Sequence record: MT135025.1
Reading direction: 5' to 3' (one strand)
DNA: 64,000 bases
This document shows, piece by piece, positions 29,402 through 43,195 of this stretch. The position numbers and the translations under genes are program-made. The first letter of the stretch is position 1; each line of letters begins with the position of its first letter. Below the pieces are notes generated by a model that was not told the origin of the DNA, made no database searches, and saw only the letters and a program-made list of their open reading frames with translations.

Positions 29402-29932
29402 CTATTTGCGCCCCTTACGATTTGCCTTATTTGCTTTTCTTTTTGCTCTACGCAATTCTTTGCGTTTTGCGATTTTGTCTGCACGTCTAACTGCATCATA
29501 ATCCGCAGCACACGACGCAGCAAACGCATCAGGCTTGAAAACGGGTTCTTGACCCACGTATCCCAAGATAGTGCCCTTAGCTTCGTTATACGCAACGTGT
29601 GAACGATGGGATGGGTCTGGGTTGATGTCAACGTGAACTTCAAACCCACGAGTACCACACATTGGCTTAACACGCAGGGCGGTTTCACCTGCTTTATAGA
29701 CTTCATTCATCAAACGACTACGAATACCATCTTTACAAGACATGTACGCTGGTTCAGTTTCGATAGATTTGAATACTTGAGCGCCTTTACTACCCTCAAG
29801 GTGAATGATGATTACAGTAGCGTAACTAATCATATCACTCTTACGCTTGCTATCACACCCAACATAAATCGTACTGTTCGGATGACTGTTATTGATAGCT
29901 GTTTCAATTGCTTCCCAATCGAACATTTTCAC
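29402..29932 (-). CDS. RNase H-like YkuK-family protein
   Basis: IYVGCDS, RLMNEV, EVHVDIN, KPDAFAASCAAD. Confidence 0.8.
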   Translation of the reverse strand: MKMFDWEAIETAINNSHPNSTIYVGCDSKRKSDMISYATVIIIHLEGSKGAQVFKSIETEPAYMSCKDGIRSRLMNEVYKAGETALRVKPMCGTRGFEVHVDINPDPSHRSHVAYNEAKGTILGYVGQEPVFKPDAFAASCAADYDAVRRADKIAKRKELRRAKRKANKANRKGRK

Positions 29933-29976
29933 CTCTGTACAAAAAAGGGCAGCACAATGCCGCCCTTATCACTTAT

Positions 29977-31413
29977 TTAAAAGCTGTAGCGATCAACGCC
30001 TACAGTTTTCAGCATGATCTTGACTGGCTCAAGCTCACCACCCAACAATGAAGTCAGGATAGATGGGCTACAACCCGATACCAGTGCAGTACCCGCTTCG
30101 CCAGCTTTAACCGGAACGTTGCCAAGACGACCACGAATGTTCCAGAAGACTAGTTGTGGCATTTCATAGCCAGCACGTGCGTACATAGCTTTGATTGCGT
30201 CGAAGTTTGCACGTTCGCCGCGACCATACCAGCCGCCACCAGTGTTTGCTTGGTCGAATTCCATGTCGCTCATGATAAGCAACTTGGTTGGCATTTCTTC
30301 TTGTGAAAGATTTGCACGTTTCGCACGCTCTAACAGAACGTTAAAGCATTTACCGATGTTTGTGCTCATGTCTTCACCTGAGCGATTCATGTTGTCAAGA
30401 CGCTCTTTTAGTGAGCTACCGCGCAACTGGTGGAAGTGCGGATCGCTTGAGAACGAAATGAACTGATCTTTGAAGATGCCTTCATTGCGTTCAGCAACAT
30501 AGATGCCAAGAGACATTGCAACTTGCTTACAAGTCACACCCGAACGATCTGTACCTGCGTTGATTGGCGTGCTCATAGAGCCAGATACGTCAACAACAGG
30601 GATGATGCGCTCATCAGAGCCTTCCATGTAGTTCGGCAGAGCTTTCCATTGCTCGTTCGCTACAGACGCATTGCCATGACTAACGCTCTTAACGACATCA
30701 TATGGGAACAATGCACCAGCGTTGATCTTCGCTTCACCTTTTTGAAGTGACTCGATGTAGCTTGTGTAACGAGCAGAAGCGTTACGACCGAATGCTTGTT
30801 GATAACGAGCAGACGCTACAGATGGCAACTTACCAAAGTCGATTGCATCCCATTCTTGAGCACACATCTTCTGTTCAACAGTGTCAGACAAAAGTGCTAG
30901 AATCTTACGCCACTGCTTCGCAGTTACACCAAGAGACTTGATTGTGCGCTTGAACACATGACCGTTTTTGCTGTTTTCACGTGGGAACCACTTAGCAGCA
31001 AGACCGTTCTTGTCGTTTACAATCGCGTTTGACCACAATGTGATCGCGTCTTTCTCAAGACTTGTACCGAACGCAGAAATCAAGTCGTCGAAACGACCTA
31101 GTTCTGGAATTTTCGACATTACAGCACGAGCTACGTCAGGCTGCTCATTACAAAGTTTAGTGAATAGAGTACGGAAAGTACCACGTTCACCCGCACCACC
31201 GCGAACATCACGAGACCATAAAAGAATGCGTGTCGCTAGTTCGGGGTTTTCTGCAAACGCACGACCGAACAGTGTTTTAGACTGATCGTTACCACGCATA
31301 GCAGCAATACCGAAGAACAAGTTTAGACACTCGTTACCTGAAGTGCTGTGAGTAACTGCACCGTTTGCTGTACGTGAATCGTTTGATTGCATAGCGTTCA
31401 TAAATGCTGACAT
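29977..31413 (-). CDS. Ro60/TROVE-like DUF2828 protein with C-terminal vWA domain
   Basis: RTANGA..STSGNECLNLF, RDVRGGAGER, GRFDDL, AKWFPRE, VVDVSGSM, SDMEFD, VFWN. Confidence 0.85.
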   Translation of the reverse strand: MSAFMNAMQSNDSRTANGAVTHSTSGNECLNLFFGIAAMRGNDQSKTLFGRAFAENPELATRILLWSRDVRGGAGERGTFRTLFTKLCNEQPDVARAVMSKIPELGRFDDLISAFGTSLEKDAITLWSNAIVNDKNGLAAKWFPRENSKNGHVFKRTIKSLGVTAKQWRKILALLSDTVEQKMCAQEWDAIDFGKLPSVASARYQQAFGRNASARYTSYIESLQKGEAKINAGALFPYDVVKSVSHGNASVANEQWKALPNYMEGSDERIIPVVDVSGSMSTPINAGTDRSGVTCKQVAMSLGIYVAERNEGIFKDQFISFSSDPHFHQLRGSSLKERLDNMNRSGEDMSTNIGKCFNVLLERAKRANLSQEEMPTKLLIMSDMEFDQANTGGGWYGRGERANFDAIKAMYARAGYEMPQLVFWNIRGRLGNVPVKAGEAGTALVSGCSPSILTSLLGGELEPVKIMLKTVGVDRYSF

Positions 31414-31448
31414 TGTTTATTCCTCATATTAAATTGCTGTAAAATGTC
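31409..31448 (-). promoter_or_regulatory. Translation-initiation hairpin of the Ro-like gene carrying the CAGCAA motif
   Basis: RNA GACAUU UUA CAGCAA uuuaauau GAGGA auaaac AAUGUC; helix includes the AUG, SD lies in the loop. Confidence 0.7.
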
Positions 31449-31462
31449 GTTTTGATGTGATG

Positions 31463-31491
31463 ATTATACACGGATTTGAACCCGTGTAAAC
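31463..31491 (-). promoter_or_regulatory. T4-like early promoter for the Ro-like gene
   Basis: GTTTAC-N17-TATAAT. Confidence 0.75.
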
Positions 31492-31504
31492 ACTTTTTTC
31501 AATT

Positions 31505-31819
31505 TTATCGAAAATTCATTCGTGTGAGATTCGTACCGTTTTCGTAAATCTCAACGAGAACACGACCGCCCGTTTCGTAAGACGTGCGAAGAGAACGATA
31601 ACCATGCTCTTCGAAGAATGTACGAATAATAGTCGCACCACGCTTGTCTTTATCAGCAGCGTGAATAGGCACTTTCACGATGATAGGGAAACTAGACCCC
31701 GACTCAACTGCGTGCATGAATTCTTTCTCACATTCGCTCGTGTAATGCTCGGTAAGAATTCGTTTTTCTTCTGCTTCACGAGCGTGAATTTGTTGTTTGA
31801 GTTCATTATGATTAATCAT
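31505..31819 (-). CDS. Hypothetical protein
   Basis: Coupled ORF. Confidence 0.75.
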   Translation of the reverse strand: MINHNELKQQIHAREAEEKRILTEHYTSECEKEFMHAVESGSSFPIIVKVPIHAADKDKRGATIIRTFFEEHGYRSLRTSYETGGRVLVEIYENGTNLTRMNFR

Positions 31820-32151
31820 TGAAACCCCGCTTGTTTGTTTTCTCGAATTGTCAATTTGACAAAAGAATATGAGTAATCTCTCATATCACGCGGATCGCCA
31901 GAGTAATGTCCGAACTGTGCGTCGAAGTTATGAAAACCCTCGCGTCGCATGACGCCTTTGATGAGAGACATCATTTCATCACAACATTCATTGCGGTCAA
32001 CATTCACCTGAATCGTGATTGGAAACTGAAACCCAGCAACGCCACCGATTTTACGTTCGATTGCTTTGCGCATTTCAACTACGAAGAGTTCTTCACGAGT
32101 TGAGCGATTCTGTTTGACTTTTTGAATTAATGTATCGTATAAATTACCCAT
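31816..32151 (-). CDS. Hypothetical protein
   Basis: Start MGNLYD at 32151 with GGA RBS. Confidence 0.75.
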   Translation of the reverse strand: MGNLYDTLIQKVKQNRSTREELFVVEMRKAIERKIGGVAGFQFPITIQVNVDRNECCDEMMSLIKGVMRREGFHNFDAQFGHYSGDPRDMRDYSYSFVKLTIRENKQAGFQ

Positions 32152-32518
32152 CAATATATTCCTTAATCGGCTTAGAAAAGTGACGAATACAAGAACTGTC
32201 AAGTCGTTTACGACCATCACCATCTATATCAGGTAGTGTGTATTCGTCATTAAACGGCTGACCGCTTTCTTTCGCAATCTCATAGGCATCGGCTCGATTG
32301 AAGTATTCACCACAATAGTTGATAAACCCCTGACCGCGATCCCCGAGTTCGTTTCGATGTTCATATGTACAACCTAGTTCTTTCAATAACTTAAAGACTG
32401 ATTGCATGTTTCGACCGAAATGGCAGCTATCAGCAACAACAATGTCGCGCACTTCACCGTTCGGTAGTGTCACTCGAATTGCATTAGCAGCAGACGATAT
32501 TACATTGACGTGCGACAT
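32144..32518 (-). CDS. Conserved phage hypothetical protein
   Basis: QGFIN..GEYFNR.DAY.IA...GQ pattern. Confidence 0.75.
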   Translation of the reverse strand: MSHVNVISSAANAIRVTLPNGEVRDIVVADSCHFGRNMQSVFKLLKELGCTYEHRNELGDRGQGFINYCGEYFNRADAYEIAKESGQPFNDEYTLPDIDGDGRKRLDSSCIRHFSKPIKEYIDG

Positions 32519-32856
32519 GTATCGTACCTCATAAAAATTGAACCAACGCGCTTATACTGTCCAGAGTGAGAAAGCAACCGAGCCATTTTACTATGACCAA
32601 CGGGATTGCTTGTCACTAGAACAACAGTGCGCGGAAAATTACGATGATCAATCGCATGAGAGAGAATATCATACCCCTCTCTACCAACATCATCACCTAG
32701 GTCATTATCCATGAATAGAGTGATGTCAGTTAGATTTGTGTGCTTGACGAAATTCATACCGTATTCGAATGTACGAAGAACTAGCTTTTCATCGTCGCGT
32801 ACGTAATCTGACGTGAACTTATTAATATCACGCAGATCATCAATCATAACGTACAT
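32500..32856 (-). CDS. Cyclic-phosphate-processing receiver-domain protein
   Basis: IDDLR, DNDLG, GYD, TSNPVG motifs. Confidence 0.75.
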   Translation of the reverse strand: MYVMIDDLRDINKFTSDYVRDDEKLVLRTFEYGMNFVKHTNLTDITLFMDNDLGDDVGREGYDILSHAIDHRNFPRTVVLVTSNPVGHSKMARLLSHSGQYKRVGSIFMRYDTCRTSM

Positions 32857-32918
32857 AATATTTCTCTTTCGTTAGTGTTGATAAATACATCATACAGGTT
32901 CAACAAACGGAAGTCAAC

Positions 32919-33290
32919 ATGAACGACGAAAAAATTATTTCTTTTGATGAATATCTAAATGAAGGGTGGTTTGAAAGGCAATGGGCTAGATATAAGGCAG
33001 GTGAAGATGCACGCAGCATAAAGAAACTAGCTAAGATGCATACCAAGCTTCTGCACATCGAACAGAAAGCAAAGCAAAACAAATACCGATACGAAGCCGT
33101 ACGGTTCAACTACGAACACATCAAAATGAATGTGCTCGATGCCAAGAAGATAATTAACAAGCTGCGATACAAGAAAGGAATTAGTCAAGAGCTAGTTCAG
33201 GCAATGGATAAACTAGACATTGAACTCGATAGACTCAACGACTTTGCCGTTGAGGGATTGCATGAGCTAATGATTCAACATAAGCTATAA
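32919..33290 (+). CDS. Putative internal head protein
   Basis: GATAAATA late-type promoter; N-terminus SFDEYLNE. Confidence 0.7.
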   Translation: MNDEKIISFDEYLNEGWFERQWARYKAGEDARSIKKLAKMHTKLLHIEQKAKQNKYRYEAVRFNYEHIKMNVLDAKKIINKLRYKKGISQELVQAMDKLDIELDRLNDFAVEGLHELMIQHKL

Positions 33291-33291
33291 A

Positions 33292-33320
33292 AGAAAAGCC
33301 CCGTTTTTGGGGCTTTTTTG
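33292..33320. terminator. Bidirectional terminator
   Basis: aaaagcccc-gttttt-ggggcttttttg. Confidence 0.8.
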
Positions 33321-33321
33321 T

Positions 33322-33534
33322 TTAATGTGAGTGGCGTAACTTCTTTTCGATCATTCGATCTACAATCGTGGAGTACATAAGATGCTCTTTGTAGTATTTC
33401 TCATCAACTCGGTTGCACTGGAATTGTCGAAAATCTTTGCGTAAGCGGGCAATGAATTTATTAAGTGCTTTGCGCACTTTGCAAACTTCAGACAGTTCCA
33501 TGCTTTTTAGTGTATCTTCAGAAAGTATTTCCAT
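33322..33534 (-). CDS. Hypothetical protein
   Basis: GAGG RBS. Confidence 0.7.
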   Translation of the reverse strand: MEILSEDTLKSMELSEVCKVRKALNKFIARLRKDFRQFQCNRVDEKYYKEHLMYSTIVDRMIEKKLRHSH

Positions 33535-33560
33535 GATTGTTCACCTCTTAGTTAATAGAA

Positions 33561-33609
33561 TACGGGAGACACGGGAATCGAACCCATTGCCTTGACCACA
33601 TATCTCCCA
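33561..33609 (-). ncRNA. Minimal tRNA-like RNA (acceptor + T arm, no anticodon arm)
   Basis: GGGAGAU/GUCUCCC stem, AUGGG-UUCGAUU-CCCGU T arm, 14-nt linker with UGGUCAAGGC. Confidence 0.55.
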
Positions 33610-33632
33610 CTGAGAGTTACGCCAATCTGAGG

Positions 33633-33863
33633 TTAGTGTGCTAGACGCATCAAACGGCGCATACGTTCGCGTTCAGATAAATCTTCCAAATTTTCTTGTT
33701 TCACCTCTTTGATTTCTTCTTCGGGTTCTTCAGCTTCCTTTTTGATTTTTTCAGCATCAGGACCGATGTTTTTCCAAAGCGAAGCATTTCGCCAGTTATC
33801 GTTAAAACCATTACCTAAACCGCGCCCTTCACGCGCATGAGATTTTTGATGAATGTTTTTCAT
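33633..33863 (-). CDS. Hypothetical protein
   Basis: Coupled to upstream gene. Confidence 0.6.
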   Translation of the reverse strand: MKNIHQKSHAREGRGLGNGFNDNWRNASLWKNIGPDAEKIKKEAEEPEEEIKEVKQENLEDLSERERMRRLMRLAH

Positions 33864-34069
33864 TATTCGTTAGATTTCTTTGTTACTTGTCTTGCTACGC
33901 CAACAGCAGCAGCACCAGCAGCTACTTTAGCACCTGTTTTTGCCGCCTTACCGGCTTTTTTAGCGCCCGACTTGATACGATCTTTTACAGAACGTTTCTT
34001 TTTCTTTTTGTCTTCTGGGCGCGACTCTTCGATTTCTGACATGAATTTGTCAAAGGTTTTCTCACTCAT
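33863..34069 (-). CDS. Putative basic internal head protein
   Basis: CTAAATA late-type promoter; MSEKTFDKFMSEIEE leader; K/A-rich body. Confidence 0.7.
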   Translation of the reverse strand: MSEKTFDKFMSEIEESRPEDKKKKKRSVKDRIKSGAKKAGKAAKTGAKVAAGAAAVGVARQVTKKSNE

Positions 34070-34106
34070 GACCTATCTCCAGTTAATTGAGTTCATTTGT
34101 ATTTAG

Positions 34107-34484
34107 TCATGAGAAAATGTGTTTTCGGCTCAACTGCACATCAAATTCATTTTCGAAGCGACAGCGTTCAGTCCCGTAAAGTACATCATCAAGCGTGAAT
34201 CGTTTTCGCTTTCGTGTGTGAAGGTTCATATAACGCTCTAGAGCAGTGTCTGAGTCGAATTCAATACGTTCACAACGTCTTTGTTCGGATGTCTGTGAAT
34301 AATCGCTTACAGTGCGATACAGAAACAATCCGCGTACCACTACTGCGTTAAGTGTATTTGAACTTTTGATTGTCACGCCGTCAATATTTTCATAACGACT
34401 CAAGGTAAAGATTATCTCTGAGTCTGGCATTTCAGCGACGCGCTTCATTTTGGATATTGATGTTCGTTTGTTTGATTTGTACAT
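34107..34484 (-). CDS. Hypothetical protein
   Basis: GAGG RBS before ATG at 34484. Confidence 0.7.
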   Translation of the reverse strand: MYKSNKRTSISKMKRVAEMPDSEIIFTLSRYENIDGVTIKSSNTLNAVVVRGLFLYRTVSDYSQTSEQRRCERIEFDSDTALERYMNLHTRKRKRFTLDDVLYGTERCRFENEFDVQLSRKHIFS

Positions 34485-34530
34485 AGTTATCACCTCATAA
34501 TGACTGTACATGATTTATCATGCGCTATAA

Positions 34531-34563: not shown

Positions 34564-34824
34564 GCAATACACAGACATTCGAGAAGTGTTTTATCGTCTT
34601 TGCTTAAATCTCAATTGACTATCTCGATGTTTCTCATCGAGAAAATACCCATGATTCGGCATGAGACCTATTTCGTTTTACAGTACGAACACCGTCTTAA
34701 TGGTCATTTCCTACCACGAGAATGCGACAGGCTCACGTCATCACTGAGAAAGCAGCTAGTGCGCCTCATTACTATTAAAGTTTGCTTCTTTGATTAGTAA
34801 TATTGCTGTACAATGTCTTATTGC
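34564..34824 (-). ncRNA. Large structured RNA L1 (261 nt) with terminal helix + CAGCAA
   Basis: 5' GCAAUA-AGACAUU pairs with 3' AAUGUCU-UAUUGC; core shared with L2. Confidence 0.7.
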
Positions 34825-35704: not shown

Positions 35705-35712
35705 AATTTGTT

Positions 35713-35806
35713 AGTGCATTGCATGGACTACTGGCGATCTTAATGGGTATCTCAAGCATTCAGAATTCCCATGCGCTACTACAATGCTTTTTTCGCTAAA
35801 TGCACT
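35713..35806 (-). ncRNA. Unidentified RNA with 8-bp terminal stem
   Basis: AGUGCAUU/AAUGCACU termini; inner AUGGG/CCCAU. Confidence 0.4.
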
Positions 35807-35807
35807 T

Positions 35808-36840: not shown

Positions 36841-36847
36841 TAAGTAC

Positions 36848-37061
36848 AGACAATACCGAAGTGTTTTTTCGTCTTTAACATGAATCGGAGTTGACTATCT
36901 TGTTGCTTCTCAACAAGCAAATATCGTCTGTTTCAGCGACGCGCCTATCTGACTATTTCTAGGCAGAGAGAATCTTTCCTTTCAAGCTGCACCGAAGCAC
37001 TGCCCAGGTTAAGATCATTACCATTTTTAGTAAGATTTTAATTTGTTGCTGTATATTGTCT
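36848..37061 (-). ncRNA. Large structured RNA L2 (214 nt), paralogue of L1
   Basis: AGACAAUA/UAUUGUCU termini + CAGCAA; shared core with compensatory changes. Confidence 0.7.
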
Positions 37062-37275: not shown

Positions 37276-37350
37276 TGGTGGACACGCAGGGAGTCGAACC
37301 CTATCTTCCTCATTGCAAGTGAGGCGCTTTCCCAATTAAGCTAACGGCCC
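37276..37350 (-). tRNA. tRNA-Ala(UGC)
   Basis: Cloverleaf, CCA. Confidence 0.9.
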
Positions 37351-37668: not shown

Positions 37669-37674
37669 GTTACT

Positions 37675-37787
37675 GAGTGTTATTACTTGCGTCGTCCAGA
37701 CCAGAGATACCAACTCTGAAAGGGAATCGAACCCCAAACATTTCTTTTCGTAAGAAGAATATTAGTAATTGTTTGCTGAAAACACTC
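37675..37787 (-). ncRNA. YrlA-like Y RNA (permuted tRNA mimic)
   Basis: Order: terminal stem + CAGCAA, T arm (GUUCGAUU), loop-closed acceptor CAGAG/CUCUG, D arm GUC-UGGAC-GAC, 3' strand. Confidence 0.75.
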
Positions 37788-37796
37788 TTCGGTATT

Positions 37797-38109: not shown

Positions 38110-38110
38110 G

Positions 38111-38185: not shown

Positions 38186-38189
38186 TTTA

Positions 38190-38260
38190 AATTAAACAGC
38201 AATCCTTTTCTCTTTTTCCAAATAAAAGTTTTGTATTGTTTGCTGAAAGATTGCTTAATT
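38190..38260 (-). ncRNA. Minimal Y-like RNA Y2
   Basis: AGCAAUC/GAUUGCU stem + UUU CAGCAA; shares UUCAGCAAACAAU with the YrlA-like RNA. Confidence 0.6.
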
Positions 38261-38263
38261 CTG

Positions 38264-38452
38264 TTACAACGTAAACTGCTCGACTTTACAAGAGTCAACA
38301 TCGTCAAACTTTTCGATTCGTCTAGCTAACATTTTAGCCTTTCGCTCAATCGAACGATCTTCGTAACCGAATTCAGATTTGTTATTGTCACAAGCTAATG
38401 CGCTCGACTTGACAACAGTCGAATCATTCATTACCATCACTAGTCTGTACAT
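38264..38452 (-). CDS. Hypothetical protein
   Basis: GAGGTG RBS. Confidence 0.6.
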   Translation of the reverse strand: MYRLVMVMNDSTVVKSSALACDNNKSEFGYEDRSIERKAKMLARRIEKFDDVDSCKVEQFTL

Positions 38453-38468
38453 AAACACCTCTGATAAT

Positions 38469-38542
38469 TGGCAGGGACATAGAGATTCGAACTCTAACGA
38501 ACGGGTTTGGAATCCGTCATGCTGCCTTTACATCATGTCCCT
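38469..38542 (-). tRNA. tRNA-Trp(CCA)
   Basis: Cloverleaf, CCA. Confidence 0.9.
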
Positions 38543-38548
38543 AAAATT

Positions 38549-38622
38549 TGGTAGCCCCAGACAGACTCGAACTGTCAACGTGCGATTATCGGTCGCGTGT
38601 TTTACCGTTAAACTATGGAGCT
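38549..38622 (-). tRNA. tRNA-Ile(GAU)
   Basis: Cloverleaf; loop CCGAUAA (C33). Confidence 0.85.
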
Positions 38623-38686
38623 AAAGTGAGCACATTACAGTGCTCGTGTTAATCGGTTAAGCGACTAAACTTCCCGGTTAACTAAT

Positions 38687-38785
38687 TGGCGGAAGACTAG
38701 GGATTCGAACCCTAACATCACCTCCCGGTGACCGACGGTTTTCAAGACCGTTGCCGCTACCCAGAATCTTTCGGCTAAGCCTTCC
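38687..38785 (-). tRNA. tRNA-Ser(UGA) with enlarged D loop
   Basis: Long variable arm; D loop AAAGAUUCUGGGUA. Confidence 0.85.
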
Positions 38786-38792
38786 ATTAATT

Positions 38793-38869
38793 TGGTTGCG
38801 TGGGGCTGGATTCGAACCAGCGTTCTCCGGCTTATGAGACCGACGAGATGACCACTTCTCTACCCCGCA
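38793..38869 (-). tRNA. tRNA-Met(CAU), initiator-like
   Basis: GCGGGGUAGAGAAG..UCGUCGG body; one bulged acceptor nucleotide. Confidence 0.8.
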
Positions 38870-38879
38870 ATTATTCAAC

Positions 38880-38963
38880 AGCTTGCGTTCTTTGGTCTGT
38901 TTATCGCTGTCTGAGTACTCGTCTAGCGATCAATAGATTAAGTTGAATTGCAGTATGCAAGCT
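38880..38963 (-). ncRNA. Minimal Y-like RNA Y3
   Basis: AGCUUGC/GCAAGCU stem + AUA CUGCAA; inner AUCGCU/AGCGAU helix. Confidence 0.6.
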
Positions 38964-38968
38964 AAAAC

Positions 38969-39054
38969 TGGTGGAGCGTAGAGGAATCGAACCTCTCTAC
39001 CCGTTAAGGGTCAGGGATTTACAGTCCCCTGTCTCACCTTGAGACGTACGCTCC
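38969..39054 (-). tRNA. tRNA-Tyr(GUA)
   Basis: Cloverleaf with variable arm, CCA. Confidence 0.9.
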
Positions 39055-39060
39055 AGAATA

Positions 39061-39135
39061 TGGTTCTCCCGACGAGATTCGAACTCGCGCACTTCACCTT
39101 GAAAGGGTGATGACCTACCGTTAGTCCACGGGAGA
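39061..39135 (-). tRNA. tRNA-Glu(UUC)
   Basis: Cloverleaf, CCA. Confidence 0.92.
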
Positions 39136-39198
39136 ATTAAATTGTATATTGATTTGCAAGCTATTTAACTCGCAAAGCGATACACAATGTATCTAATT

Positions 39199-39275
39199 TG
39201 GTACGCCGCCCTGGACTCGAACCAGACACCTGAGAGTTAAAAGCTCCCTGCTCTTCCATGATGAGCTACCGACGC
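39199..39275 (-). tRNA. tRNA-Lys(UUU) 1
   Basis: Cloverleaf, CCA. Confidence 0.9.
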
Positions 39276-39286
39276 ATTATAAAATC

Positions 39287-39361
39287 TGGTGGGTCGCATG
39301 AGATTCGAACTCACACCGGTCTGGTTAAAAGCCAGATGTACTACCGTTATACGAACGACCC
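39287..39361 (-). tRNA. tRNA-Lys(UUU) 2
   Basis: Cloverleaf, CCA. Confidence 0.9.
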
Positions 39362-39367
39362 AGAATG

Positions 39368-39442
39368 TGGTGCACCCCCTCGGAATCGAACCGAGCACTG
39401 CGGGACTTCAATCCGCCGCTTTTCCTGATAAGCTAAGGGTGC
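39368..39442 (-). tRNA. tRNA-Phe(GAA)
   Basis: Cloverleaf; loop UUGAAGU. Confidence 0.85.
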
Positions 39443-39443
39443 A

Positions 39444-39520
39444 TGGTACGCATGAAGAGATTCGAACTCTTATCATTCGGCTTCTAAGACCGACGCCTCT
39501 GCCAATTGGGCTACATGCGC
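39444..39520 (-). tRNA. tRNA-Leu(UAG)
   Basis: Cloverleaf, CCA. Confidence 0.9.
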
Positions 39521-39545
39521 ATTAAATTTTGTAAACTTCTTTTCT

Positions 39546-39576
39546 TCATTGTACATGATGTTTATATCGTTGTAAA
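39546..39576 (-). promoter_or_regulatory. T4-like early promoter within the RNA cluster
   Basis: GTTTAC-N18-TACAAT. Confidence 0.6.
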
Positions 39577-39739
39577 CATCTTTTTGAAATATTTTGAAGA
39601 ACTTAACGTTTTCATTTCTATGTGTTAATATTAACACTCACTCAAGACATCTTAAACACTAATTTGTGAAAAAGTTCGTTAAATTCTATCATCACGACAG
39701 TACTTAACGAGATACGGTCCTAAGCGTATCATATAAATT

Positions 39740-39863
39740 CAGAATGGTGAGACTTGAACTCACTTCGAGTAATAGCGTAAACTAACAGTTGTTGCCAGAG
39801 GCTATCAATTATTCTCTACCGAGTATGTTGCAACTCTGCATTTCCCCATTTCTAGGCATTCTG
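39740..39863 (-). ncRNA. tRNA-body chimera C1 (expanded anticodon arm, no CCA)
   Basis: CAGAAUG/CAUUCUG acceptor, GUGAG-UUCAAGU-CUCAC T arm, insert with AGAG/CUCU then GGCAAC. Confidence 0.6.
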
Positions 39864-39868
39864 AAATA

Positions 39869-39944
39869 TGGCACCCAATACAAGATTCGAACTTGTAACC
39901 TTCGCCTTCGTAGGGCGCTGCTCTTCCAATTGAGCTAATCGGGC
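39869..39944 (-). tRNA. tRNA-Arg(ACG)
   Basis: Cloverleaf, CCA. Confidence 0.92.
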
Positions 39945-39952
39945 ATTAAAAC

Positions 39953-40029
39953 TGGTCCGTGACAAGCGATTCGAACGCTTAACTTCTCCGCCCCAAACGG
40001 AGTACTCTACCAGATTGAGCTAGTCACGG
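39953..40029 (-). tRNA. tRNA-Pro(UGG) 1
   Basis: Cloverleaf, CCA. Confidence 0.9.
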
Positions 40030-40038
40030 ATTTTAAAT

Positions 40039-40112
40039 TGGTCGGGACGAAGAGACTCGAACTCTTACCACATGCTCCCAAAGCATGAACGCTGCCTTTA
40101 CGCCACGTCCCG
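40039..40112 (-). tRNA. tRNA-Pro(UGG) 2
   Basis: Cloverleaf, CCA. Confidence 0.9.
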
Positions 40113-40187
40113 TTTGTTCTTTAACTTTGTTTATCATACTCTGCATTCAAAGTACGTTAAACAAAATTTTTTGATTTCCTTCGCCCA

Positions 40188-40213
40188 TAAAAAAGGACGC
40201 TACGTGCGTCCTC
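40188..40213 (-). terminator. Terminator
   Basis: aggacgc-acgta-gcgtcct + T6 on the minus strand. Confidence 0.75.
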
Positions 40214-40481
40214 AAGTATACTTCTATGTTATACTATTGGACTACGTTTGTGGAGACCACTCTTGTTTCGCACACGGATTCGCTAGATACACGAATTCTG
40301 AGCGCAGAAAATCGCTGCGTAAAATCATATCAGAATGTGTATTCGAATGTGTCATGGAAACTCTCTAAACGTTAAAATAAAAATGTTTTTGTTTGTATAA
40401 TAGTACTTATAACACCAATTTTGACGATTTGCGGTATTTTCGCAGAAAATTGAAAAAAAAATTCAACTTTCTGCGATTTTC

Positions 40482-40715
40482 TTATCGACCTAGGTGTTTT
40501 CGCTTGTTCATTTCAACAAGAATTTCATCGTTGTAATGGCGGTTCAGTTCAACATACTTCTTGTGTTGATCTGAAGTCAACTCGTTAGTGTCATTCAGAT
40601 GCTTCAAGAACCCAAGAGGTTTGCGAAACGACTTGCGATATTCGTTCAGACGCTCGTCCGTTAGATTATGCAGTTGTTTCGGAGTCAGTAAAGTTTTATT
40701 GATGTCAAAACTCAT
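40482..40715 (-). CDS. Hypothetical protein
   Basis: GAGGT RBS before MSFDINK. Confidence 0.7.
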   Translation of the reverse strand: MSFDINKTLLTPKQLHNLTDERLNEYRKSFRKPLGFLKHLNDTNELTSDQHKKYVELNRHYNDEILVEMNKRKHLGR

Positions 40716-40740
40716 GTTGTACCTCACTTGTTATTAAAAT

Positions 40741-40856
40741 TGGTAGTCGGGGCTGGATTCGAACCAGCGACCACGTGCTTAACAGGCAATTGAAGGAGTG
40801 CTGGAGCGATACTTGTCAGTATCATTCTTCGTGCTCTACCACTGAGCTACCCGACT
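40741..40856 (-). ncRNA. tRNA-Asn(GUU) body with a 41-nt insert in the anticodon stem (C2)
   Basis: Removing the insert gives CGUGC-CUGUUAA-GCACG; insert has GAUACU-GACA-AGUAUC + CAGCAC. Confidence 0.8.
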
Positions 40857-40861
40857 ATGAA

Positions 40862-41383
40862 TTATTTAACTTTGAACTTCAAATTACGCCAGTCAAAGTT
40901 TCGTTTGTTCTTTGTGCTATAGAACGTGCCCCAATCAATAGCAATAGGACAGTTCTTACTCCCCACACGAGCGATAAAGACATCGTGAGTCTCGCTGTAA
41001 CGCTCTCTAAGCTCTTTTACGCGCTTATCGTAGTTAGCGATATACTCTGCACAAGCTTTGTTGTAATCAGCTTTAGAGAAGCGTTCATTGCTTGCAAAGA
41101 CACGCCCGAGGTACGGTCGAATAACACGCACTCGCTCTTTAGACCAGCCCATACTGAAGCTGTTTTCAATCTCGCCAGTGATTTTACCAGTCTTCTTACA
41201 TCTAGCAAGAATAACCCAACAACGCTCACGTCGAAAATCTTTTCGTACGTACACGTTAACGTGCTTGTCAATGTACTCTTGGTAACGAGCGTTATACTCA
41301 GCACGCAGTTTATTGCGTACTTCAGGAGACATTGCAGCGCGTTCTTCTTTCGAAAACGCTTGTGCGAATTTCAATGGTTTCAT
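40862..41383 (-). CDS. Hypothetical basic protein
   Basis: GAGGA RBS before MKPLKF. Confidence 0.8.
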   Translation of the reverse strand: MKPLKFAQAFSKEERAAMSPEVRNKLRAEYNARYQEYIDKHVNVYVRKDFRRERCWVILARCKKTGKITGEIENSFSMGWSKERVRVIRPYLGRVFASNERFSKADYNKACAEYIANYDKRVKELRERYSETHDVFIARVGSKNCPIAIDWGTFYSTKNKRNFDWRNLKFKVK

Positions 41384-41396
41384 TATAATTTCCTCT

Positions 41397-41636
41397 TGGC
41401 GCCGCTCGTGTGAATCGAACACACGTCAAACACAACACCTCGTCCACCCGATTAGAGTTTCGAAGTAAGAGCTAATCAGCATTTCGGAGCAGTCGAGCGT
41501 TATTTCTACGAGTGAGCTTTCGACAACTCACACGCACTTTCTACTCGGTCCCAGTGATTCGGTACCAACACAGGTTGCGAACCTATGTCTGCACTAATGT
41601 TGGGAAAACACTGCGTATTGTACACCAGTTAGCGGC
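41397..41636 (-). ncRNA. 240-nt tmRNA-shaped RNA with tRNA-like ends
   Basis: GCCGCU/AGCGGC acceptor, GUGUG-UUCGAUU-CACAC T arm, G-CCA end; ~190-nt multi-hairpin interior. Confidence 0.7.
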
Positions 41637-41643
41637 ATTTTAT

Positions 41644-41874
41644 TTAAAGATAGCTGTCAAATACATCATCATCAACTTCTTCAATATTGATGTCAGCGTA
41701 ACATTCATTCGCAATTGCTTGAATTTCATCTATTGAAACTGTACCTGAGTACAAAACAACAGCGTCATCCGGAATCACAACATCACACATGTATTTGTTA
41801 AACATTGCAGTTCTGAAATCAGAATCAACAGAGTAACCGTGCATTGATGTGATAACTAGCAATTTATGTGACAT
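41644..41874 (-). CDS. Hypothetical protein
   Basis: TTGACA-N17-TAGTAT promoter, GAGGA RBS. Confidence 0.75.
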   Translation of the reverse strand: MSHKLLVITSMHGYSVDSDFRTAMFNKYMCDVVIPDDAVVLYSGTVSIDEIQAIANECYADINIEEVDDDVFDSYL

Positions 41875-41951
41875 AATGTTTTCCTCGTGTAGTTGATAAT
41901 GTGTATACTACACGTTGATGAAACGCCTGTCAACAACTTTTTCAATTTTTT

Positions 41952-42028
41952 TGGTAGCCCCTCTCGGATTCGAACCGAGAACCTGACGATTATGAGTCGT
42001 CTGCTACTACCGTTACAGCTAAGGGGCT
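41952..42028 (-). tRNA. tRNA(CAU), Ile2-like
   Basis: GCCCCUUAGCU...GACUCAUAAUCG resembles lysidine tRNA-Ile2. Confidence 0.85.
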
Positions 42029-42395
42029 ATCGTTCTAGAAATCGACCGACTTTAGCAGCGAAGATGTTTGCTTCTTCTGCAATCAAAGCAGTTGATTTCA
42101 TTTGATGAAAAGCGTCTTGTTGATGCAGGACATCTAGTTTACCAGCGCATTTCATCAGTTCTTTTACTGATTGCATAATCTCAATGTTATCAATCTGACT
42201 CGTGTCAGGGTGATGGTTGAGACTATCCAAGATAGGGAGTACTTGTTGATAGTAACCCATGCCGATGAAGTTTATCATAAGTCTGTACTGCATTTCAACA
42301 GCAAATGTACAATATTTTCGAAGATTGCGTTTTACAATCTCACAACGATGCAAGATACAATCAAGCTCGTCATTTATGTCATCAAACTTATTCAT
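42027..42395 (-). CDS. Hypothetical protein
   Basis: GAGG RBS before MNKFDD. Confidence 0.7.
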   Translation of the reverse strand: MNKFDDINDELDCILHRCEIVKRNLRKYCTFAVEMQYRLMINFIGMGYYQQVLPILDSLNHHPDTSQIDNIEIMQSVKELMKCAGKLDVLHQQDAFHQMKSTALIAEEANIFAAKVGRFLER

Positions 42396-42409
42396 AAAAC
42401 CTCGAAAAT

Positions 42410-42533
42410 TGGTGGAGAGTGATGGATTTGAACCACCGACCAAAAGATTTACCTAGTTATTAAGGTTTGCAGCATGAATGCTTGTCAGTATTCTTTAACA
42501 TTCTTTTGCTCTACCAGACTGAGCTAACTCTCC
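42410..42533 (-). ncRNA. tRNA-body chimera C3 (anticodon loop replaced by motif domain, CCA present)
   Basis: AAAGA/UCUUU stem encloses GAAU-ACUGACAAGC-AUUC + AUG CUGCAA. Confidence 0.75.
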
Positions 42534-42543
42534 AGAATTTGAG

Positions 42544-42654
42544 GGTGAAGTACAGGACTCGAACCTGCGACCTCCGGCGTGCAATACATGCAGCATGAAA
42601 TCTTAACAGATTTCTTTTTAGGCCGGCATTCTAACCAACTGAACTAACTTCACC
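42544..42654 (-). ncRNA. tRNA-Asp-like body chimera C4
   Basis: CCGGC/GCCGG stem encloses GAAAUCU-GUUA-AGAUUUC + AUG CUGCAU. Confidence 0.75.
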
Positions 42655-42664
42655 AATGTAAAAA

Positions 42665-42802
42665 CATATAGTTGCGGGTGTAGGATTCGAACCTACATCA
42701 CGATCTTATGAATGATATGCGAAATTGGTTGCCGTACAGATTCTTATCAGAATCAGTTTTGTGCTACGTGTGCTACCACTTACACCAACCCGCAACTATA
42801 TG
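42665..42802 (-). ncRNA. tRNA-body chimera C5 (CAU loop retained, extended acceptor stem)
   Basis: Insert GAUUCU-GAUA-AGAAUC + UGUA CGGCAA; ~15-bp terminal helix, no CCA. Confidence 0.75.
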
Positions 42803-42869
42803 CTTTCGGGATGCTTACGCAGGTTCTTCTCTACGTAAGCACAGATCCTCAATGTATATTTTGCCTTAG

Positions 42870-43025
42870 CTAATCACAACACAACCCAATATCGTGCGCT
42901 TTAATTACGGGATTGATGACCCGTTCGCATGTGATTAGCGTAAAAGTATGATTACGCACCTTTTCTTCTTCAATGTCCAAGGCAAAGAGGACTATGAATA
43001 CCAGTGCGAGAAGATATACAATCAA
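42870..43025 (-). CDS. Small membrane protein
   Basis: GAGG RBS + TTG start; N-terminal hydrophobic stretch. Confidence 0.45.
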   Translation of the reverse strand: MIVYLLALVFIVLFALDIEEEKVRNHTFTLITCERVINPVIKAHDIGLCCD

Positions 43026-43048
43026 ATTGCTCACCTCGCTTAATAAGT

Positions 43049-43195
43049 GAGAGTACATTGGTCGAGTGTAACGGAATCGAACCGTTCCCACGATCTCCCT
43101 ATGATATGCGTAAATTGGTTGCTGAATATAATCATGTCTGATTACAGTATGCTACGTGTGCTGCCACTACACCAACACTCGACCAATATACTCTC
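43049..43195 (-). ncRNA. tRNA-body chimera C6 (paralogue of C5, extended acceptor stem)
   Basis: Insert UAAUC..GAUUA + UUCAGCAACCAAUUU; ~20-bp terminal helix. Confidence 0.75.

What the first reader, a model, noticed from the sequence alone, without database searches (positions are those of the whole stretch)
29402..43195. Candidate phage Ro60-like RNP system: one Ro/TROVE-vWA protein and about 12 RNAs sharing a helix + CNGCA motif
Seen (minus strand): the same motif, a 6-8 bp helix followed by 2-4 nt and C[A/G/U]GCA[A/C/U], recurs in the Ro-like gene's own leader (GACAUU-UUA-CAGCAA), L1 (AGACAUU-GUA-CAGCAA), L2 (AGACAAUA-UA-CAGCAA), the YrlA-like RNA (GAGUGUU-UU-CAGCAA), Y2 (AGCAAUC-UUU-CAGCAA), Y3 (AGCUUGC-AUA-CUGCAA), and inside the anticodon arms of six tRNA bodies C1-C6 (C1 is the weakest match). 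The helix sequences differ while pairing is kept. Established: Ro60/Rsr proteins (TROVE + vWA) bind Y RNAs; bacterial YrlA RNAs mimic tRNA; Rsr-Y RNA tethers PNPase. Inference: this phage has expanded one Ro-binding site into a set of adaptor RNAs with different effector halves (tRNA mimics, full tRNAs, large RNAs) for tRNA protection/repair, nuclease decoying or enzyme tethering. I do not know of a description of this motif family.
Basis: partly seen in the sequence, partly recalled or inferred. Interest (0 to 1): 0.95.

Follow-up and report, generated by a model that had tools for sequence, protein, structure and literature searches.

The report
Phage Ro-like protein and partner RNAs
This KVP40-type Vibrio phage encodes a Ro60-shaped protein and eleven small RNA sites sharing one short helix-plus-CAGCAA module; the same pairing turns up in many unrelated phages, and the module matches the orphan "Class I" RNAs of Dictyostelium, so it looks like an undescribed, widespread RNA-protein particle.

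Summary
The window is Vibrio phage V07, which is KVP40-like. Gene 29977-31413(-) is a DUF2828/DUF7788 protein. Its model matches only Ro60 structures over its full length.

Eleven of the twelve claimed sites carry one module: A-G-N5 helix strand, 3 nt, C-N-G-C-A-A, a G-poor tail, then AAAC, the partner strand ending in C-U, then G-U.
- Six sites are "open", with the ends of the RNA paired: L1, L2, Yrl, Y2, Y3 and the gene's own leader.
- Five sites are circular permutations inside the anticodon arm of tRNA-like bodies. The hexaloop UGNNAA joins the two former ends.

The bare hexamer occurs at chance frequency. The full module does not.
- The helices covary among orthologues.
- A covariance model finds the module beside DUF2828 genes in Felixounavirus, Aeromonas, Campylobacter, Listeria and mycobacteriophages.
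- It also hits 34 of 79 uncultivated phage loci, with 53 of 55 hits on the gene's strand.
- It finds nothing in the phage T5 tRNA region.
- DUF2828 is the only protein shared by these neighbourhoods.

Unexpectedly, the only Rfam family that touches these RNAs is the Dictyostelium Class I RNA, which has the same stem, CUUACAGCAA motif and CUG(U) end. Binding and function remain untested.

The parts
29977..31413 (-). DUF2828 + DUF7788 protein (478 aa): Ro60-like alpha-helical repeat ring plus vWA domain with MIDAS residues. Orthologue of KVP40.0300, annotated 'RNA-binding protein'.
   Evidence: Pfam PF25043 E 1e-45 and PF11443 E 6e-29. phrog_850. AlphaFold2 model with pLDDT 77.5. The nine best Foldseek PDB hits are all Ro60 or Rsr, full length, TM about 0.5. 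D275-x-S277-x-S279, T351 and D383 are invariant.
29402..29932 (-). PF04308 (RNaseH_like / DUF458) gene directly downstream. A conserved gene pair with the Ro-like gene and a candidate nuclease partner.
   Evidence: Pfam E 6e-17. The same pair occurs in L003, L012, L013 and L014, in L012 in a different genomic context.
31463..31490 (-). Sigma-70 / T4-early-like promoter (TTTACA-16-TATAAT) of the Ro-like gene.
   Evidence: 11 of 12 consensus positions match. Sequence read.
31405..31452 (-). Module in the gene's own 5' leader: CGACAUU-UUA-CAGCAA...AAAC-AAUGUC. The Shine-Dalgarno sequence lies in the loop and the AUG lies inside the 3' strand.
   Evidence: Model R1, 21.9 bits, full length, not in the training set. 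Leaders of L003, L005, L011, L013 and L014 also hit. In L011 the helix has changed to GAAAUU/GAUUUC.
34570..34819 (-). L1: open-form RNA of about 250 nt. It starts just after tRNA-Ser and is followed by a terminator at 34558-34536.
   Evidence: AGACAUU-GUA-CAGCAA ... AAUGUCU-GUG. The 17-nt 5' element is conserved in six related phages while the flanks diverge. Terminator.
36845..37061 (-). L2: open-form RNA of about 217 nt in the tRNA-Arg to tRNA-Met gap.
   Evidence: AGACAAU-AUA-CAGCAA ... AUUGUCU-GUA. Compensatory change to AGGCAAU/AUUGCCU in L014.
37671..37788 (-). Yrl: open-form RNA of about 118 nt that fills the tRNA-Gln to tRNA-Thr spacer. It contains a T-arm-like hairpin (GGGGUUCGAUUCCCU) and a D-like hairpin.
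   Evidence: AGAGUGU-UUU-CAGCAA ... ACACUCA-GUA. The helix covaries to GAGUGAU/AUCACUC in L012. The T-arm-like stem covaries among phages.
38195..38255 (-). Y2: minimal open-form RNA of about 60 nt, just upstream of tRNA-Asn. The best match to the Dictyostelium Class I RNA model.
   Evidence: R1 36.7 bits. Rfam RF01414 27.4 bits against a gathering score of 41.5. The helix AGCAAUC/GAUUGCU becomes AGUAAUC/GAUUACU in L004 and L013, and UGGAUAC/GUAUCCA in L011.
38877..38963 (-). Y3: open-form RNA of about 87 nt that fills the tRNA-Tyr to tRNA-Met spacer.
   Evidence: AGCUUGC-AUA-CUGCAA ... GCAAGCU-GUU. R1 25.1 bits.
40741..40856 (-). E (KVP40 tRNA-Pseudo-3): tRNA body with an encoded CCA end and the permuted module in its anticodon arm (module 40788-40832).
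   Evidence: Rfam tRNA 49.8 bits, 113 nt. GAUAC-UGACAA-GUAUC-GCUC-CAGCAC. R2 40.7 bits.
42410..42533 (-). D (KVP40 tRNA-Pseudo-4): tRNA body with an encoded CCA end and the permuted module at 42457-42501.
   Evidence: Rfam tRNA 55.5 bits, 121 nt. The hairpin covaries in L002 and L003. R2 41.3 bits.
42544..42654 (-). C (KVP40 tRNA-Pseudo-5): tRNA body with the permuted module at 42578-42622.
   Evidence: Rfam tRNA 55.5 bits, 110 nt. GAAAUC-UGUUAA-GAUUUC-AUG-CUGCAU. R2 43.5 bits.
42670..42797 (-). B: tRNA-like RNA with a 10-bp terminal stem, D and T arms, and the permuted module at 42719-42763.
   Evidence: The hairpin changes from GAUUC/GAAUC to GCAAGC/GCUUGU in L003 and L004. R2 47.7 bits.
43059..43185 (-). 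A: paralogue of B with an 11-bp terminal stem and the permuted module at 43109-43153.
   Evidence: The hairpin changes from UAAUC/GAUUA to GCUUAC/GUAAGU in L002. R2 44.7 bits.

Best explanation
The region encodes a Ro60/Y-RNA-like ribonucleoprotein system. Its protein is the DUF2828/DUF7788 family, a distant Ro60-shaped ring with a vWA domain. Its RNAs are an undescribed family that matches the Dictyostelium Class I RNA architecture.

Shown here:
- The RNAs share a compact module. It is a 7-bp helix with a near-invariant G-C pair next to its outer end, and an invariant G directly 3' of that end. At the inner end, the 5' strand continues as NNN-C-N-G-C-A-A plus a G-poor single strand, and the 3' strand is preceded by AAAC.
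- The module occurs in two topologies. In the open form the RNA's own ends form the helix. In the permuted form the helix is capped by U-G-N-N-A-A, and the RNA ends move to the acceptor stem of a tRNA-like body.
- The module combines with different second parts: nothing (Y2), a T-arm-like domain (Yrl), tRNA-like bodies (A-E), large RNAs (L1, L2) and the leader of the protein's own mRNA.
- The module sits next to DUF2828 genes in unrelated phage lineages.

Inferred:
1. The DUF2828 protein binds this module. Helix plus single strand would parallel the way Ro60 holds a Y RNA stem and threads single strands.
2. The open RNAs are released from the polycistronic tRNA transcript by tRNA-end processing, because they fill inter-tRNA spacers.
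3. Binding to the leader closes a helix that contains the AUG, giving translational autoregulation.
4. The second parts act as adaptors or decoys that bring tRNA-handling or RNA-degrading enzymes, possibly the co-conserved DUF458 RNase H-like protein, to the particle, or that divert host nucleases.
5. In Felixounavirus Bas63 the probable orthologue (gp130) counters the Ppl defence system, so an anti-defence or RNA-surveillance role is the most likely biology.
For: Protein:
- Pfam DUF2828 and DUF7788.
- All nine best PDB fold matches are Ro60 or Rsr, including phage phiLo Ro60, aligned over the full length.
- The MIDAS motif and many Arg/Lys residues are invariant.

RNA module:
- Orthologue alignments found by BLAST, not by structure, show hairpin covariation in A-E.
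- The 5' strand plus CAGCAA of L1, L2, Yrl and Y2 is conserved while the flanks diverge.
- There are compensatory helix changes in L011-L014.
- Invariant columns are C14, G16, C17, A18, A19 and G45. 98.3% of cells are paired and 7 of 7 pairs are compensatory.
- For the permuted form, 97.3% of cells are paired and 6 of 7 pairs are compensatory.
- The hexaloop UG..AA and the preceding AAAC reproduce the 3' UG, the 5' AA and the AAAC of the open form.

Association with the gene:
- The module abuts or neighbours the gene in Felixounavirus EC6, Aeromonas phiWae14, Campylobacter CP81, Listeria AG20 and mycobacteriophage MsGreen.
- R1 gives 25 hits with E<0.1 in 330 kb, all on the gene's strand.
- In 79 IMG/VR loci, 53 of 55 hits are on the gene's strand, 34 loci are hit, and 17 of 45 hits lie within 14 nt upstream or 314 nt downstream of the gene.
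- Nothing is found in 40 kb of the phage T5 tRNA region.
- DUF2828 is the only protein family shared by three or more of six lineages' neighbourhoods.

Other support:
- Leader hits that were not in the training set.
- The middle RNA of MsGreen matches Rfam YrlA at 39.3 bits, E 3e-7.
- The literature reports Bas63 gp130 as Ro60-like, directly upstream of tRNA genes and a Ppl counter.
- Canonical phage Ro60 binds adjacent Y-like RNAs.
Against: - No binding, expression or processing data exist for any of these RNAs.
- The fold match to Ro60 is moderate (TM about 0.5, 12-16% identity). Sequence search finds no Ro60 in the PDB.
- The module is not the known Ro60 site, GNCGAA in bacteria or the bulged GGUCCGA helix.
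- In this phage most of the RNAs lie 3-12 kb from the gene.
- In Dictyostelium the one protein shown to bind a Class I RNA directly is an RRM protein, Rnp1A, not a Ro-like protein.
- Only 34 of 79 metagenomic loci gave a hit. Many loci are short, and the model misses long or permuted forms.
- For the open form, my choice of the 3' partner by best pairing inflates the pairing statistics.
- I did not verify by sequence that Bas63 gp130 is a DUF2828 member.
Confidence: 0.7

Rival explanations
1. The module is a processing or stability signal read by a ribonuclease or another RNA-binding protein. Candidates are host RNase E or RNase P, the phage DUF458 RNase H-like protein, or an RRM-type protein as in Dictyostelium. 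On this view the Ro-like gene is only a co-regulated neighbour.
For: The open RNAs fill inter-tRNA spacers, and end-pairing stems are common in spacers that lack the motif. A DUF458 gene is co-conserved in the Schizotequatrovirus-like lineage. The only direct Class I binder known in Dictyostelium is Rnp1A.
Against: In Listeria, Campylobacter and mycobacteriophages the RNAs abut the DUF2828 gene and not tRNAs. DUF458 is not found in those neighbourhoods, and no protein other than DUF2828 is shared. The module also sits in the gene's own leader in many lineages.
Confidence: 0.17
2. The extended 'tRNAs' are intron-containing or decayed tRNA genes, as database annotations imply (tRNA-Pseudo, or tRNA-Asn/Phe/Val/Cys with an insert). 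On this view the shared hexamer is coincidence or common descent among paralogues.
For: KVP40 annotates them as pseudo-tRNAs. phi-Grn1 and 1.081.O annotate them as tRNA-Val, Asn, Phe and Cys of 113-122 nt. C, D and E pass the Rfam tRNA threshold.
Against: The insert is the best-conserved and covarying part of these RNAs. The would-be anticodon loops are not conserved. In D of phage D480, U33 is C. In C the stretch is a variable A-run. The same module occurs outside tRNA bodies and in distant phages. A and B have 10-11 bp terminal stems.
Confidence: 0.05
3. The element acts at the DNA level, as a promoter, a regulator binding site or a homing-endonuclease target, and not as RNA.
For: One copy overlaps a weak promoter-like match at 37062-37035. 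Homing endonuclease genes are frequent in the region.
Against: The paired strand is 50-250 nt away and covaries. Hits are strictly strand-specific. A circularly permuted version keeps the same flanking nucleotides. Spacing to -10-like hexamers is inconsistent (sequence read).
Confidence: 0.03

Closest known systems
Ro60 (Rsr) with Y RNAs / YrlA, including phage phiLo Ro60 with Yrl1 and Yrl2
   Same: A ring-shaped helical-repeat plus vWA protein. Small RNAs are encoded beside the gene, and their 5' and 3' ends pair. A conserved single-stranded motif sits on the 5' side of the loop next to that stem. The second module often mimics tRNA. Several RNAs serve one protein.
   Different: The protein is not a TROVE (PF05731) member by sequence. 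The RNA motif is NNN-CNGCAA plus AAAC, not GNCGAA or CGAA. Rfam YrlA and Y RNA models are not met. Some RNAs are circularly permuted into tRNA bodies. One copy lies in the gene's own leader.
Dictyostelium Class I RNAs (Rfam RF01414)
   Same: A 6-7 bp stem joins the ends and covaries. The motif (C)UUACAGCAA lies directly 3' of the 5' strand. There is a conserved 5' G paired to C, followed by UG(U) at the 3' end. An A-rich stretch precedes the 3' strand. The length is about 55-60 nt.
   Different: Scores of 17-27 bits are below the gathering score of 41.5. The phage RNAs are made within tRNA operons or UTRs, not from DUSE promoters. The phage helix has one extra A-U pair. The phage forms carry extra modules. 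Class I RNAs were reported as unique to Dictyostelia, with the RRM protein Rnp1A as binder. No link to DUF2828 has been reported in the papers I could search.
Felixounavirus Bas63 gp130 (PhageMaP preprint)
   Same: A Ro60-like phage protein directly upstream of the tRNA cluster. The authors guessed that some 'tRNA' genes might be Y RNAs. It counters the Ppl defence system. The relative EC6 has the same gene order and four module-bearing RNAs.
   Different: No RNA partner, motif or structure was identified there. Orthology of gp130 to this protein is inferred from gene order, not checked by sequence here.
Stable non-tRNA RNAs of phage tRNA clusters (T5 RNAI/III/1/2; T4 species 1 and 2)
   Same: Small stable RNAs, some tRNA-like, are co-transcribed with phage tRNAs. 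Their function has been unknown for decades.
   Different: The T5 tRNA region shows no match to either model.

Membership tests
Ro60 / TROVE protein family | Sequence membership in the TROVE domain (PF05731) | tested here: not met
   Pfam reports only DUF2828 and DUF7788. NCBIfam gives no hit. phmmer against PDB sequences finds no Ro60.
Ro60 / TROVE protein family | Fold: a ring of alpha-helical repeats followed by a vWA domain | tested here: met
   The model has pLDDT 77.5. The nine best Foldseek PDB hits are Ro60 or Rsr over 504-561 aligned columns, E 4e-7 to 8e-4, TM 0.35-0.53.
Ro60 / TROVE protein family | MIDAS motif (DxSxS...T...D) in the vWA domain | tested here: met
   D275, S277, S279, T351 and D383 are invariant in 34 homologues.
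Ro60 / TROVE protein family | Binds Y RNAs or misfolded RNAs | not testable with these tools
   Needs EMSA, RIP-seq or a structure.
Bacterial Y RNA / YrlA (RF02553) | Covariance-model score at or above the gathering threshold (69 bits) | tested here: not met
   The best score in the window is 30.4 bits, spanning the junction of two adjacent tRNA-like RNAs. The MsGreen RNA scores 39.3 bits.
Bacterial Y RNA / YrlA (RF02553) | GNCGAAN0-1G Ro-binding motif on the 5' strand | tested here: not met
   The conserved element is NNN-CNGCAA.
Bacterial Y RNA / YrlA (RF02553) | Terminal stem formed by the 5' and 3' ends, plus a tRNA-like domain | tested here: met
   Yrl has a terminal stem and a T-arm-like hairpin with covariation. 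A-E carry the same parts in permuted order.
Dictyostelium Class I RNA (RF01414) | Covariance-model score at or above the gathering threshold (41.5 bits) | tested here: not met
   Y2 27.4 bits, Listeria phage 22.8 and 20.1, EC6 19.7 and 16.9. It is the only Rfam family that hits these RNAs, always over the full model length.
Dictyostelium Class I RNA (RF01414) | Short stem joining the 5' and 3' ends, with structure conserved rather than sequence | tested here: met
   A 7-bp helix, 98.3% paired, with all pairs showing compensatory changes. Definition.
Dictyostelium Class I RNA (RF01414) | 11-nt motif next to the 5' half of the stem, with U3, C6, C9, A10 and A11 invariant (CCUUACAGCAA) | tested here: met
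   The phage consensus is uUA-CAGCAA, with C14, G16, C17, A18 and A19 invariant. Dictyostelium sequences.
Dictyostelium Class I RNA (RF01414) | Invariant 5' G paired to C, followed by UG(U) at the 3' end | tested here: met
   G5-C43 in 33 of 34 sequences, G45 invariant, U46 common. Compare.
Dictyostelium Class I RNA (RF01414) | DUSE promoter about 60 nt upstream; occurrence in Dictyostelia | tested here: not met
   The phage RNAs lie in tRNA operons or UTRs with bacterial promoters.
tRNA (RF00005) | Cloverleaf scoring above threshold | tested here: met
   C, D and E score 55.5, 55.5 and 49.8 bits. A and B give no tRNA hit, not even in the relaxed E-value search.
tRNA (RF00005) | 7-nt anticodon loop with U33 on a 5-bp stem | tested here: not met
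   A 43-52 nt insert replaces the loop. The putative loop residues are not conserved among orthologues. ARAGORN calls none of the five.

The most novel reading that the evidence does not exclude
DUF2828 proteins and 'Class I-type' RNAs form one ancient, horizontally spread ribonucleoprotein family, a sister of Ro60/Y RNA. It would occur in hundreds of phages, possibly in giant viruses, and in eukaryotes. On this reading the abundant Class I RNAs of Dictyostelium, orphan since 2004 and reported as unique to social amoebae, are the eukaryotic members of the RNA family found here, and their unidentified partner is a DUF2828 protein. Phages have in addition permuted the RNA into tRNA bodies and into the protein's own mRNA leader.
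Probability: 0.35. Interest if true: 0.93.

Novelty: new variant of a known kind. Interest (0 to 1): 0.9.

Why it matters
- **A partner for a large orphan family.** DUF2828 has more than 7,700 homologues in the protein search and occurs in 711 phage genomes. This would give the family a defined RNA partner and a testable binding site.
- **An explanation for annotated oddities.** It would explain the long-annotated 'pseudo-tRNAs' of KVP40-like phages and several spurious small ORFs.
- **A handle on anti-defence.** It would give a molecular starting point for the reported anti-Ppl activity of the Felixounavirus homologue.
- **New RNA architecture.** It shows a natural circular permutation of a protein-binding RNA module into a tRNA scaffold, the mirror image of YrlA.
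- **A test for Dictyostelium.** The link to Dictyostelium Class I RNAs would make a twenty-year-old open question directly testable: what these abundant, developmentally regulated RNAs bind and do.

Tried and rejected
- **Hexamer counts.** Counting the hexamer, or a loose helix-plus-hexamer pattern, in the window against shuffles is not significant and cannot carry the claim.
- **Promoter reading.** I considered T4-type early or MotA-like promoters for the intergenic copies. Spacing to -10-like hexamers is inconsistent, and the covarying distal partner argues for RNA.
- **Intron-containing tRNAs.** Rejected. The residues that would form the anticodon loop are not conserved, and the loop 'anticodons' differ between orthologues: B carries GAU, GUU, GUA or GAC in different phages.
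- **Anticodon-loop mimicry by the UGNNAA hexaloop** (a nuclease or TGT decoy). Not supported, because NN is unconstrained. The loop is better explained as the joined former ends (UG + NN + AA).
- **Rfam YrlA hit at 42475-42596.** It spans the 3' half of C and the 5' half of D. It is an artefact of tRNA-likeness in permuted order.
- **Sequence-only HMM of the phage 5' half against Dictyostelium Class I RNAs.** Only 6-10 bits each. 13 of 15 RNAs were recovered against 12 of 2000 shuffles, so this is weak support only.
- **Search for a DUF2828 protein in the Dictyostelium proteome files** attached to the Class I paper. The files are truncated, so the result is inconclusive.
- **Naming the other three Class I-binding proteins (Avesson 2011).** The paper is not held.
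- **Looking up Bas63 by guessed accession.** This failed.
- **A sixth motif-bearing tRNA body.** Not found. Two further tRNA-like RNAs in the region lack the module.

Full report
**What the window is.** The finding region is 100% identical to Vibrio phage V07 and 97% identical to KVP40, a Schizotequatrovirus. All relevant features lie on the minus strand. From low to high window coordinates they are:
- a tail-fibre gene;
- a PF04308 (DUF458, RNase H-like) gene at 29402-29932;
- a DUF2828/DUF7788 gene at 29977-31413;
- small ORFs;
- a cluster of 28 ARAGORN tRNAs between 34830 and 42028.

Rfam adds three over-long 'tRNAs' of 110-121 nt. KVP40's record annotates these as tRNA-Pseudo-3, -4 and -5, and names the protein 'RNA-binding protein'.

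**The protein.**
- Sequence methods place it only in DUF2828/DUF7788 and phrog_850. There is no NCBIfam hit and no Ro60 hit among PDB sequences.
- An AlphaFold2 model built from 34 homologues has pLDDT 77.5 and pTM 0.72.
- Its nine best PDB fold matches are all Ro60 proteins: Thermus phage phiLo, Xenopus, Deinococcus Rsr and human. Each aligns over the whole length, with E from 4e-7 to 8e-4 and TM about 0.5. Only isolated vWA domains follow.
- The MIDAS residues D275, S277, S279, T351 and D383, and a run of Arg/Lys residues in the helical part, are invariant.
- 'Ro60-like fold' is therefore supported. Membership in the TROVE sequence family is not.
- The family is very large. The protein search returned more than 7,700 homologues, and tblastn found it in 711 phage records. 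These include Felixounavirus, mycobacteriophages (where it is already annotated 'Ro-like RNA binding protein'), and Listeria, Staphylococcus, Campylobacter, Bacillus and Aeromonas phages.
- It typically sits beside tRNA clusters.

**The RNAs in the window.** Reading the minus strand confirms all six named non-tRNA sites and five tRNA-like bodies.

In L1, L2, Yrl, Y2, Y3 and the leader, the 7-mer that precedes a 3-nt spacer and CAGCAA/CUGCAA pairs with a strand 50-250 nt downstream. The RNA ends therefore form a terminal stem, with the motif just inside it.
- Yrl, Y2 and Y3 fill the spacers tRNA-Gln/Thr, (ORF)/tRNA-Asn and tRNA-Tyr/Met almost exactly.
- L1 starts after tRNA-Ser and ends at a terminator.

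In A-E the motif follows a 5-6 bp hairpin with hexaloop UGNNAA (AGACAU in A). The hairpin sits in a 43-52 nt insert that replaces the anticodon loop.

**The two forms are one module.** Aligning 34 open-form instances gaplessly gives these features:
- invariant C14, G16, C17, A18 and A19, which is the CNGCAA motif;
- an invariant G directly after the 3' strand;
- a near-invariant G-C pair next to the outer end of the helix;
- a frequent AAAC before the 3' strand.

In the hairpin form, the strand before the loop ends in C. The loop begins UG and ends AA, the next strand begins G, and AAAC precedes the hairpin. The hexaloop is thus the former 3' tail (UG) joined to the former 5' leader (AA). In other words, the hairpin form is a circular permutation in which the RNA's ends have moved to the acceptor stem of a tRNA-like body. 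This is the mirror image of the tRNA-to-YrlA relationship.

**Is it more than chance?** The hexamer alone is not. A loose helix-plus-hexamer descriptor is not either. Other spacers also have end-pairing stems. The evidence comes from comparison.
1. Orthologues of A-E located by BLAST in phages D480, 1.081.O, phi-Grn1 and nt-1 keep the hairpin with different sequences. They keep CNGCA with N varying, while the loop's NN drifts. 97.3% of cells are paired and 6 of 7 pairs are compensatory.
2. The 5' strand plus CAGCAA of L1, L2, Yrl and Y2 is conserved where the flanks have diverged.
3. More distant relatives show compensatory changes:
 - Yrl: GAGUGUU/AACACUC to GAGUGAU/AUCACUC.
 - L2: AGACAAU/AUUGUCU to AGGCAAU/AUUGCCU.
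 - Y2: AGCAAUC/GAUUGCU to AGUAAUC/GAUUACU and UGGAUAC/GUAUCCA.
 - Leader: GACAUU/AAUGUC to GAAAUU/GAUUUC.
4. Pooled, 98.3% of cells pair and all 7 pairs show double changes. The caveat is that I picked the partner strand by best pairing.

**Association with the gene.** The same module lies next to the DUF2828 gene in every distant lineage I fetched:
- four RNAs in the tRNA cluster just downstream in Felixounavirus EC6 (AGACCGU-UUA-CAGCAA...ACGGUCU-GG);
- one open and two permuted copies in Aeromonas phiWae14;
- two copies immediately upstream in Campylobacter CP81;
- three immediately upstream in Listeria AG20;
- three immediately downstream in mycobacteriophage MsGreen.

A covariance model of the open form (R1) gave 25 hits with E<0.1 in 330 kb, all on the gene's strand. 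These include six leaders that were not in the training set.

In 79 IMG/VR loci, with proteins 46-55% identical and 1.25 Mb in total, R1 gave 55 hits with E<=1, and 53 of these were on the gene's strand. Thirty-four loci had a hit with E<0.1. Seventeen of those 45 hits lie within 14 nt upstream or 314 nt downstream of the gene.

The permuted model (R2) finds only T4-like lineages. Neither model hits 40 kb of the T5 tRNA region, which has its own stable RNAs. In an all-against-all comparison of ORFs from six lineages' neighbourhoods, DUF2828 is the only family shared by three or more of them.

**Comparison with known RNA families.**
- The RNAs are not YrlA or Y RNA members. Their scores are far below threshold and the GNCGAA site is absent. 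One MsGreen RNA does contain a YrlA-like tRNA mimic, at 39.3 bits and E 3e-7.
- The only Rfam family that touches the minimal RNAs is the Dictyostelium Class I RNA. It always matches over the full model length. Y2 scores 27.4 bits, the Listeria phage RNAs 22.8 and 20.1, and the EC6 RNAs 19.7 and 16.9, against a gathering score of 41.5.
- Class I RNAs are defined by five features. They have a 6-bp covarying stem joining the ends, an 11-nt motif next to the 5' strand, a conserved 5' G, a 3' CUGU and a length of about 60 nt.
- The published D. discoideum sequences read GUUGAC-CUUA-CAGCAA...AAAAC..GUCAAC-UG. The phage RNAs meet each of these structural definitions.
- Class I RNAs were reported to be unique to Dictyostelia. 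Only one direct binder is named, the RRM protein Rnp1A, plus three unnamed proteins.
- DUF2828 proteins also occur in plants and in mimivirus-like sequences. I could not test whether dictyostelids encode one.

**How it most likely works.**

Shown: a conserved, covarying RNA module in two topologies and several contexts, tightly linked to a Ro60-shaped protein gene.

Inferred:
- The protein binds the helix end and the adjacent single strands.
- The open RNAs are cut out of the tRNA precursor by tRNA-end processing.
- The leader copy gives feedback control, because the AUG lies in the 3' strand and the Shine-Dalgarno sequence lies in the loop.
- The appended tRNA-like or large domains serve as adaptors or decoys, as Y RNAs do for Ro60 and PNPase.
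- The co-conserved DUF458 RNase H-like gene may be an effector.
- A preprint reports that the Ro60-like gp130 of Felixounavirus Bas63, located directly upstream of its tRNA genes, counters the Ppl defence system. The authors speculate that some 'tRNAs' are Y RNAs. The RNAs found here in the relative EC6 are concrete candidates.

**Novelty.** Searches of the held literature found no description of this RNA family, of a DUF2828 RNA partner, or of Class I-like RNAs outside Dictyostelia. Ro60/Y RNA particles, including phage ones, are known. I therefore rate this a new variant of a known kind. It has an unusually wide distribution and an unexpected link to a eukaryotic orphan RNA class.

Noticed in passing
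window 41397-41636 (-): An RNA of about 240 nt with tRNA-like ends: acceptor-like stem GCCGCU/AGCGGC, T-arm GUGUGUUCGAUUCACAC and a 3' GCCA. It has a long structured insert. It is conserved at 68-98% identity in five related phages but lacks the CNGCAA module.
   Followed up: partly
window 39739-39864 (-): A second tRNA-like RNA, in the tRNA-Arg to tRNA-Leu gap: terminal stem UCAGAAUG/CAUUCUGA and T-arm GUGAGUUCAAGUCUCAC. It has no exact module.
   Followed up: no
window 37279-37350 (-): KVP40 'tRNA-Pseudo-1' scores 44.9 bits with Rfam and has a normal-looking anticodon loop, CUUGCAA. It would read as tRNA-Ala(UGC). ARAGORN misses it, and relatives L013 and L014 have a called tRNA-Ala(UGC). 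It is probably a real tRNA.
   Followed up: partly
window 35705-35807 (-): The tRNA-His to tRNA-Cys spacer has a terminal stem AGUGCAUU/AAUGCACU. UAGCGAAAAAAG follows it directly, which is a CGAA element reminiscent of the canonical bacterial Y RNA site.
   Followed up: no
window 29402-29932 (-); L012 11747-12289; L013 11482-12006; L014 11491-12021: The DUF2828 gene is followed by a PF04308 (DUF458, RNase H-like) gene in several lineages. In L012 the surrounding genes are different (T4 replication genes). This looks like a conserved two-gene unit.
   Followed up: partly
L008 8861-8998; L010 10685-10777: Annotated small CDSs coincide with module-bearing RNAs and are probably not genes. They are Campylobacter CP81 ORF140 and mycobacteriophage MsGreen gene 55 (30 aa).
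   Followed up: no
L002 14368-14958 (phage D480): A homing endonuclease gene sits between the upstream genes and the Ro-like gene, and the usual leader is replaced. The new start region reads UUACAGCAAUG, so CAGCAA directly abuts the start codon.
   Followed up: no
L007 12761-12878 (Aeromonas phiWae14): A 118-nt Rfam tRNA hit contains two T-arm-like hairpins in tandem. It lies just upstream of the two module-bearing tRNA-like RNAs.
   Followed up: no
window 40788-40832 and L007 12950-12985: E-type bodies carry a second conserved element, GCCUGUUAAGC, downstream of the module. It looks like an Asn-type anticodon loop (CUGUUAA) on a 2-3 bp stem, and it is shared between Vibrio and Aeromonas phages.
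   Followed up: no
L095 (phage T5, record positions 30284-33083): T5's annotated stable RNAs of unknown function (RNAI, RNAIII, RNA1, RNA2 and others) lie among its tRNAs. They show no match to either model built here.
   Followed up: yes
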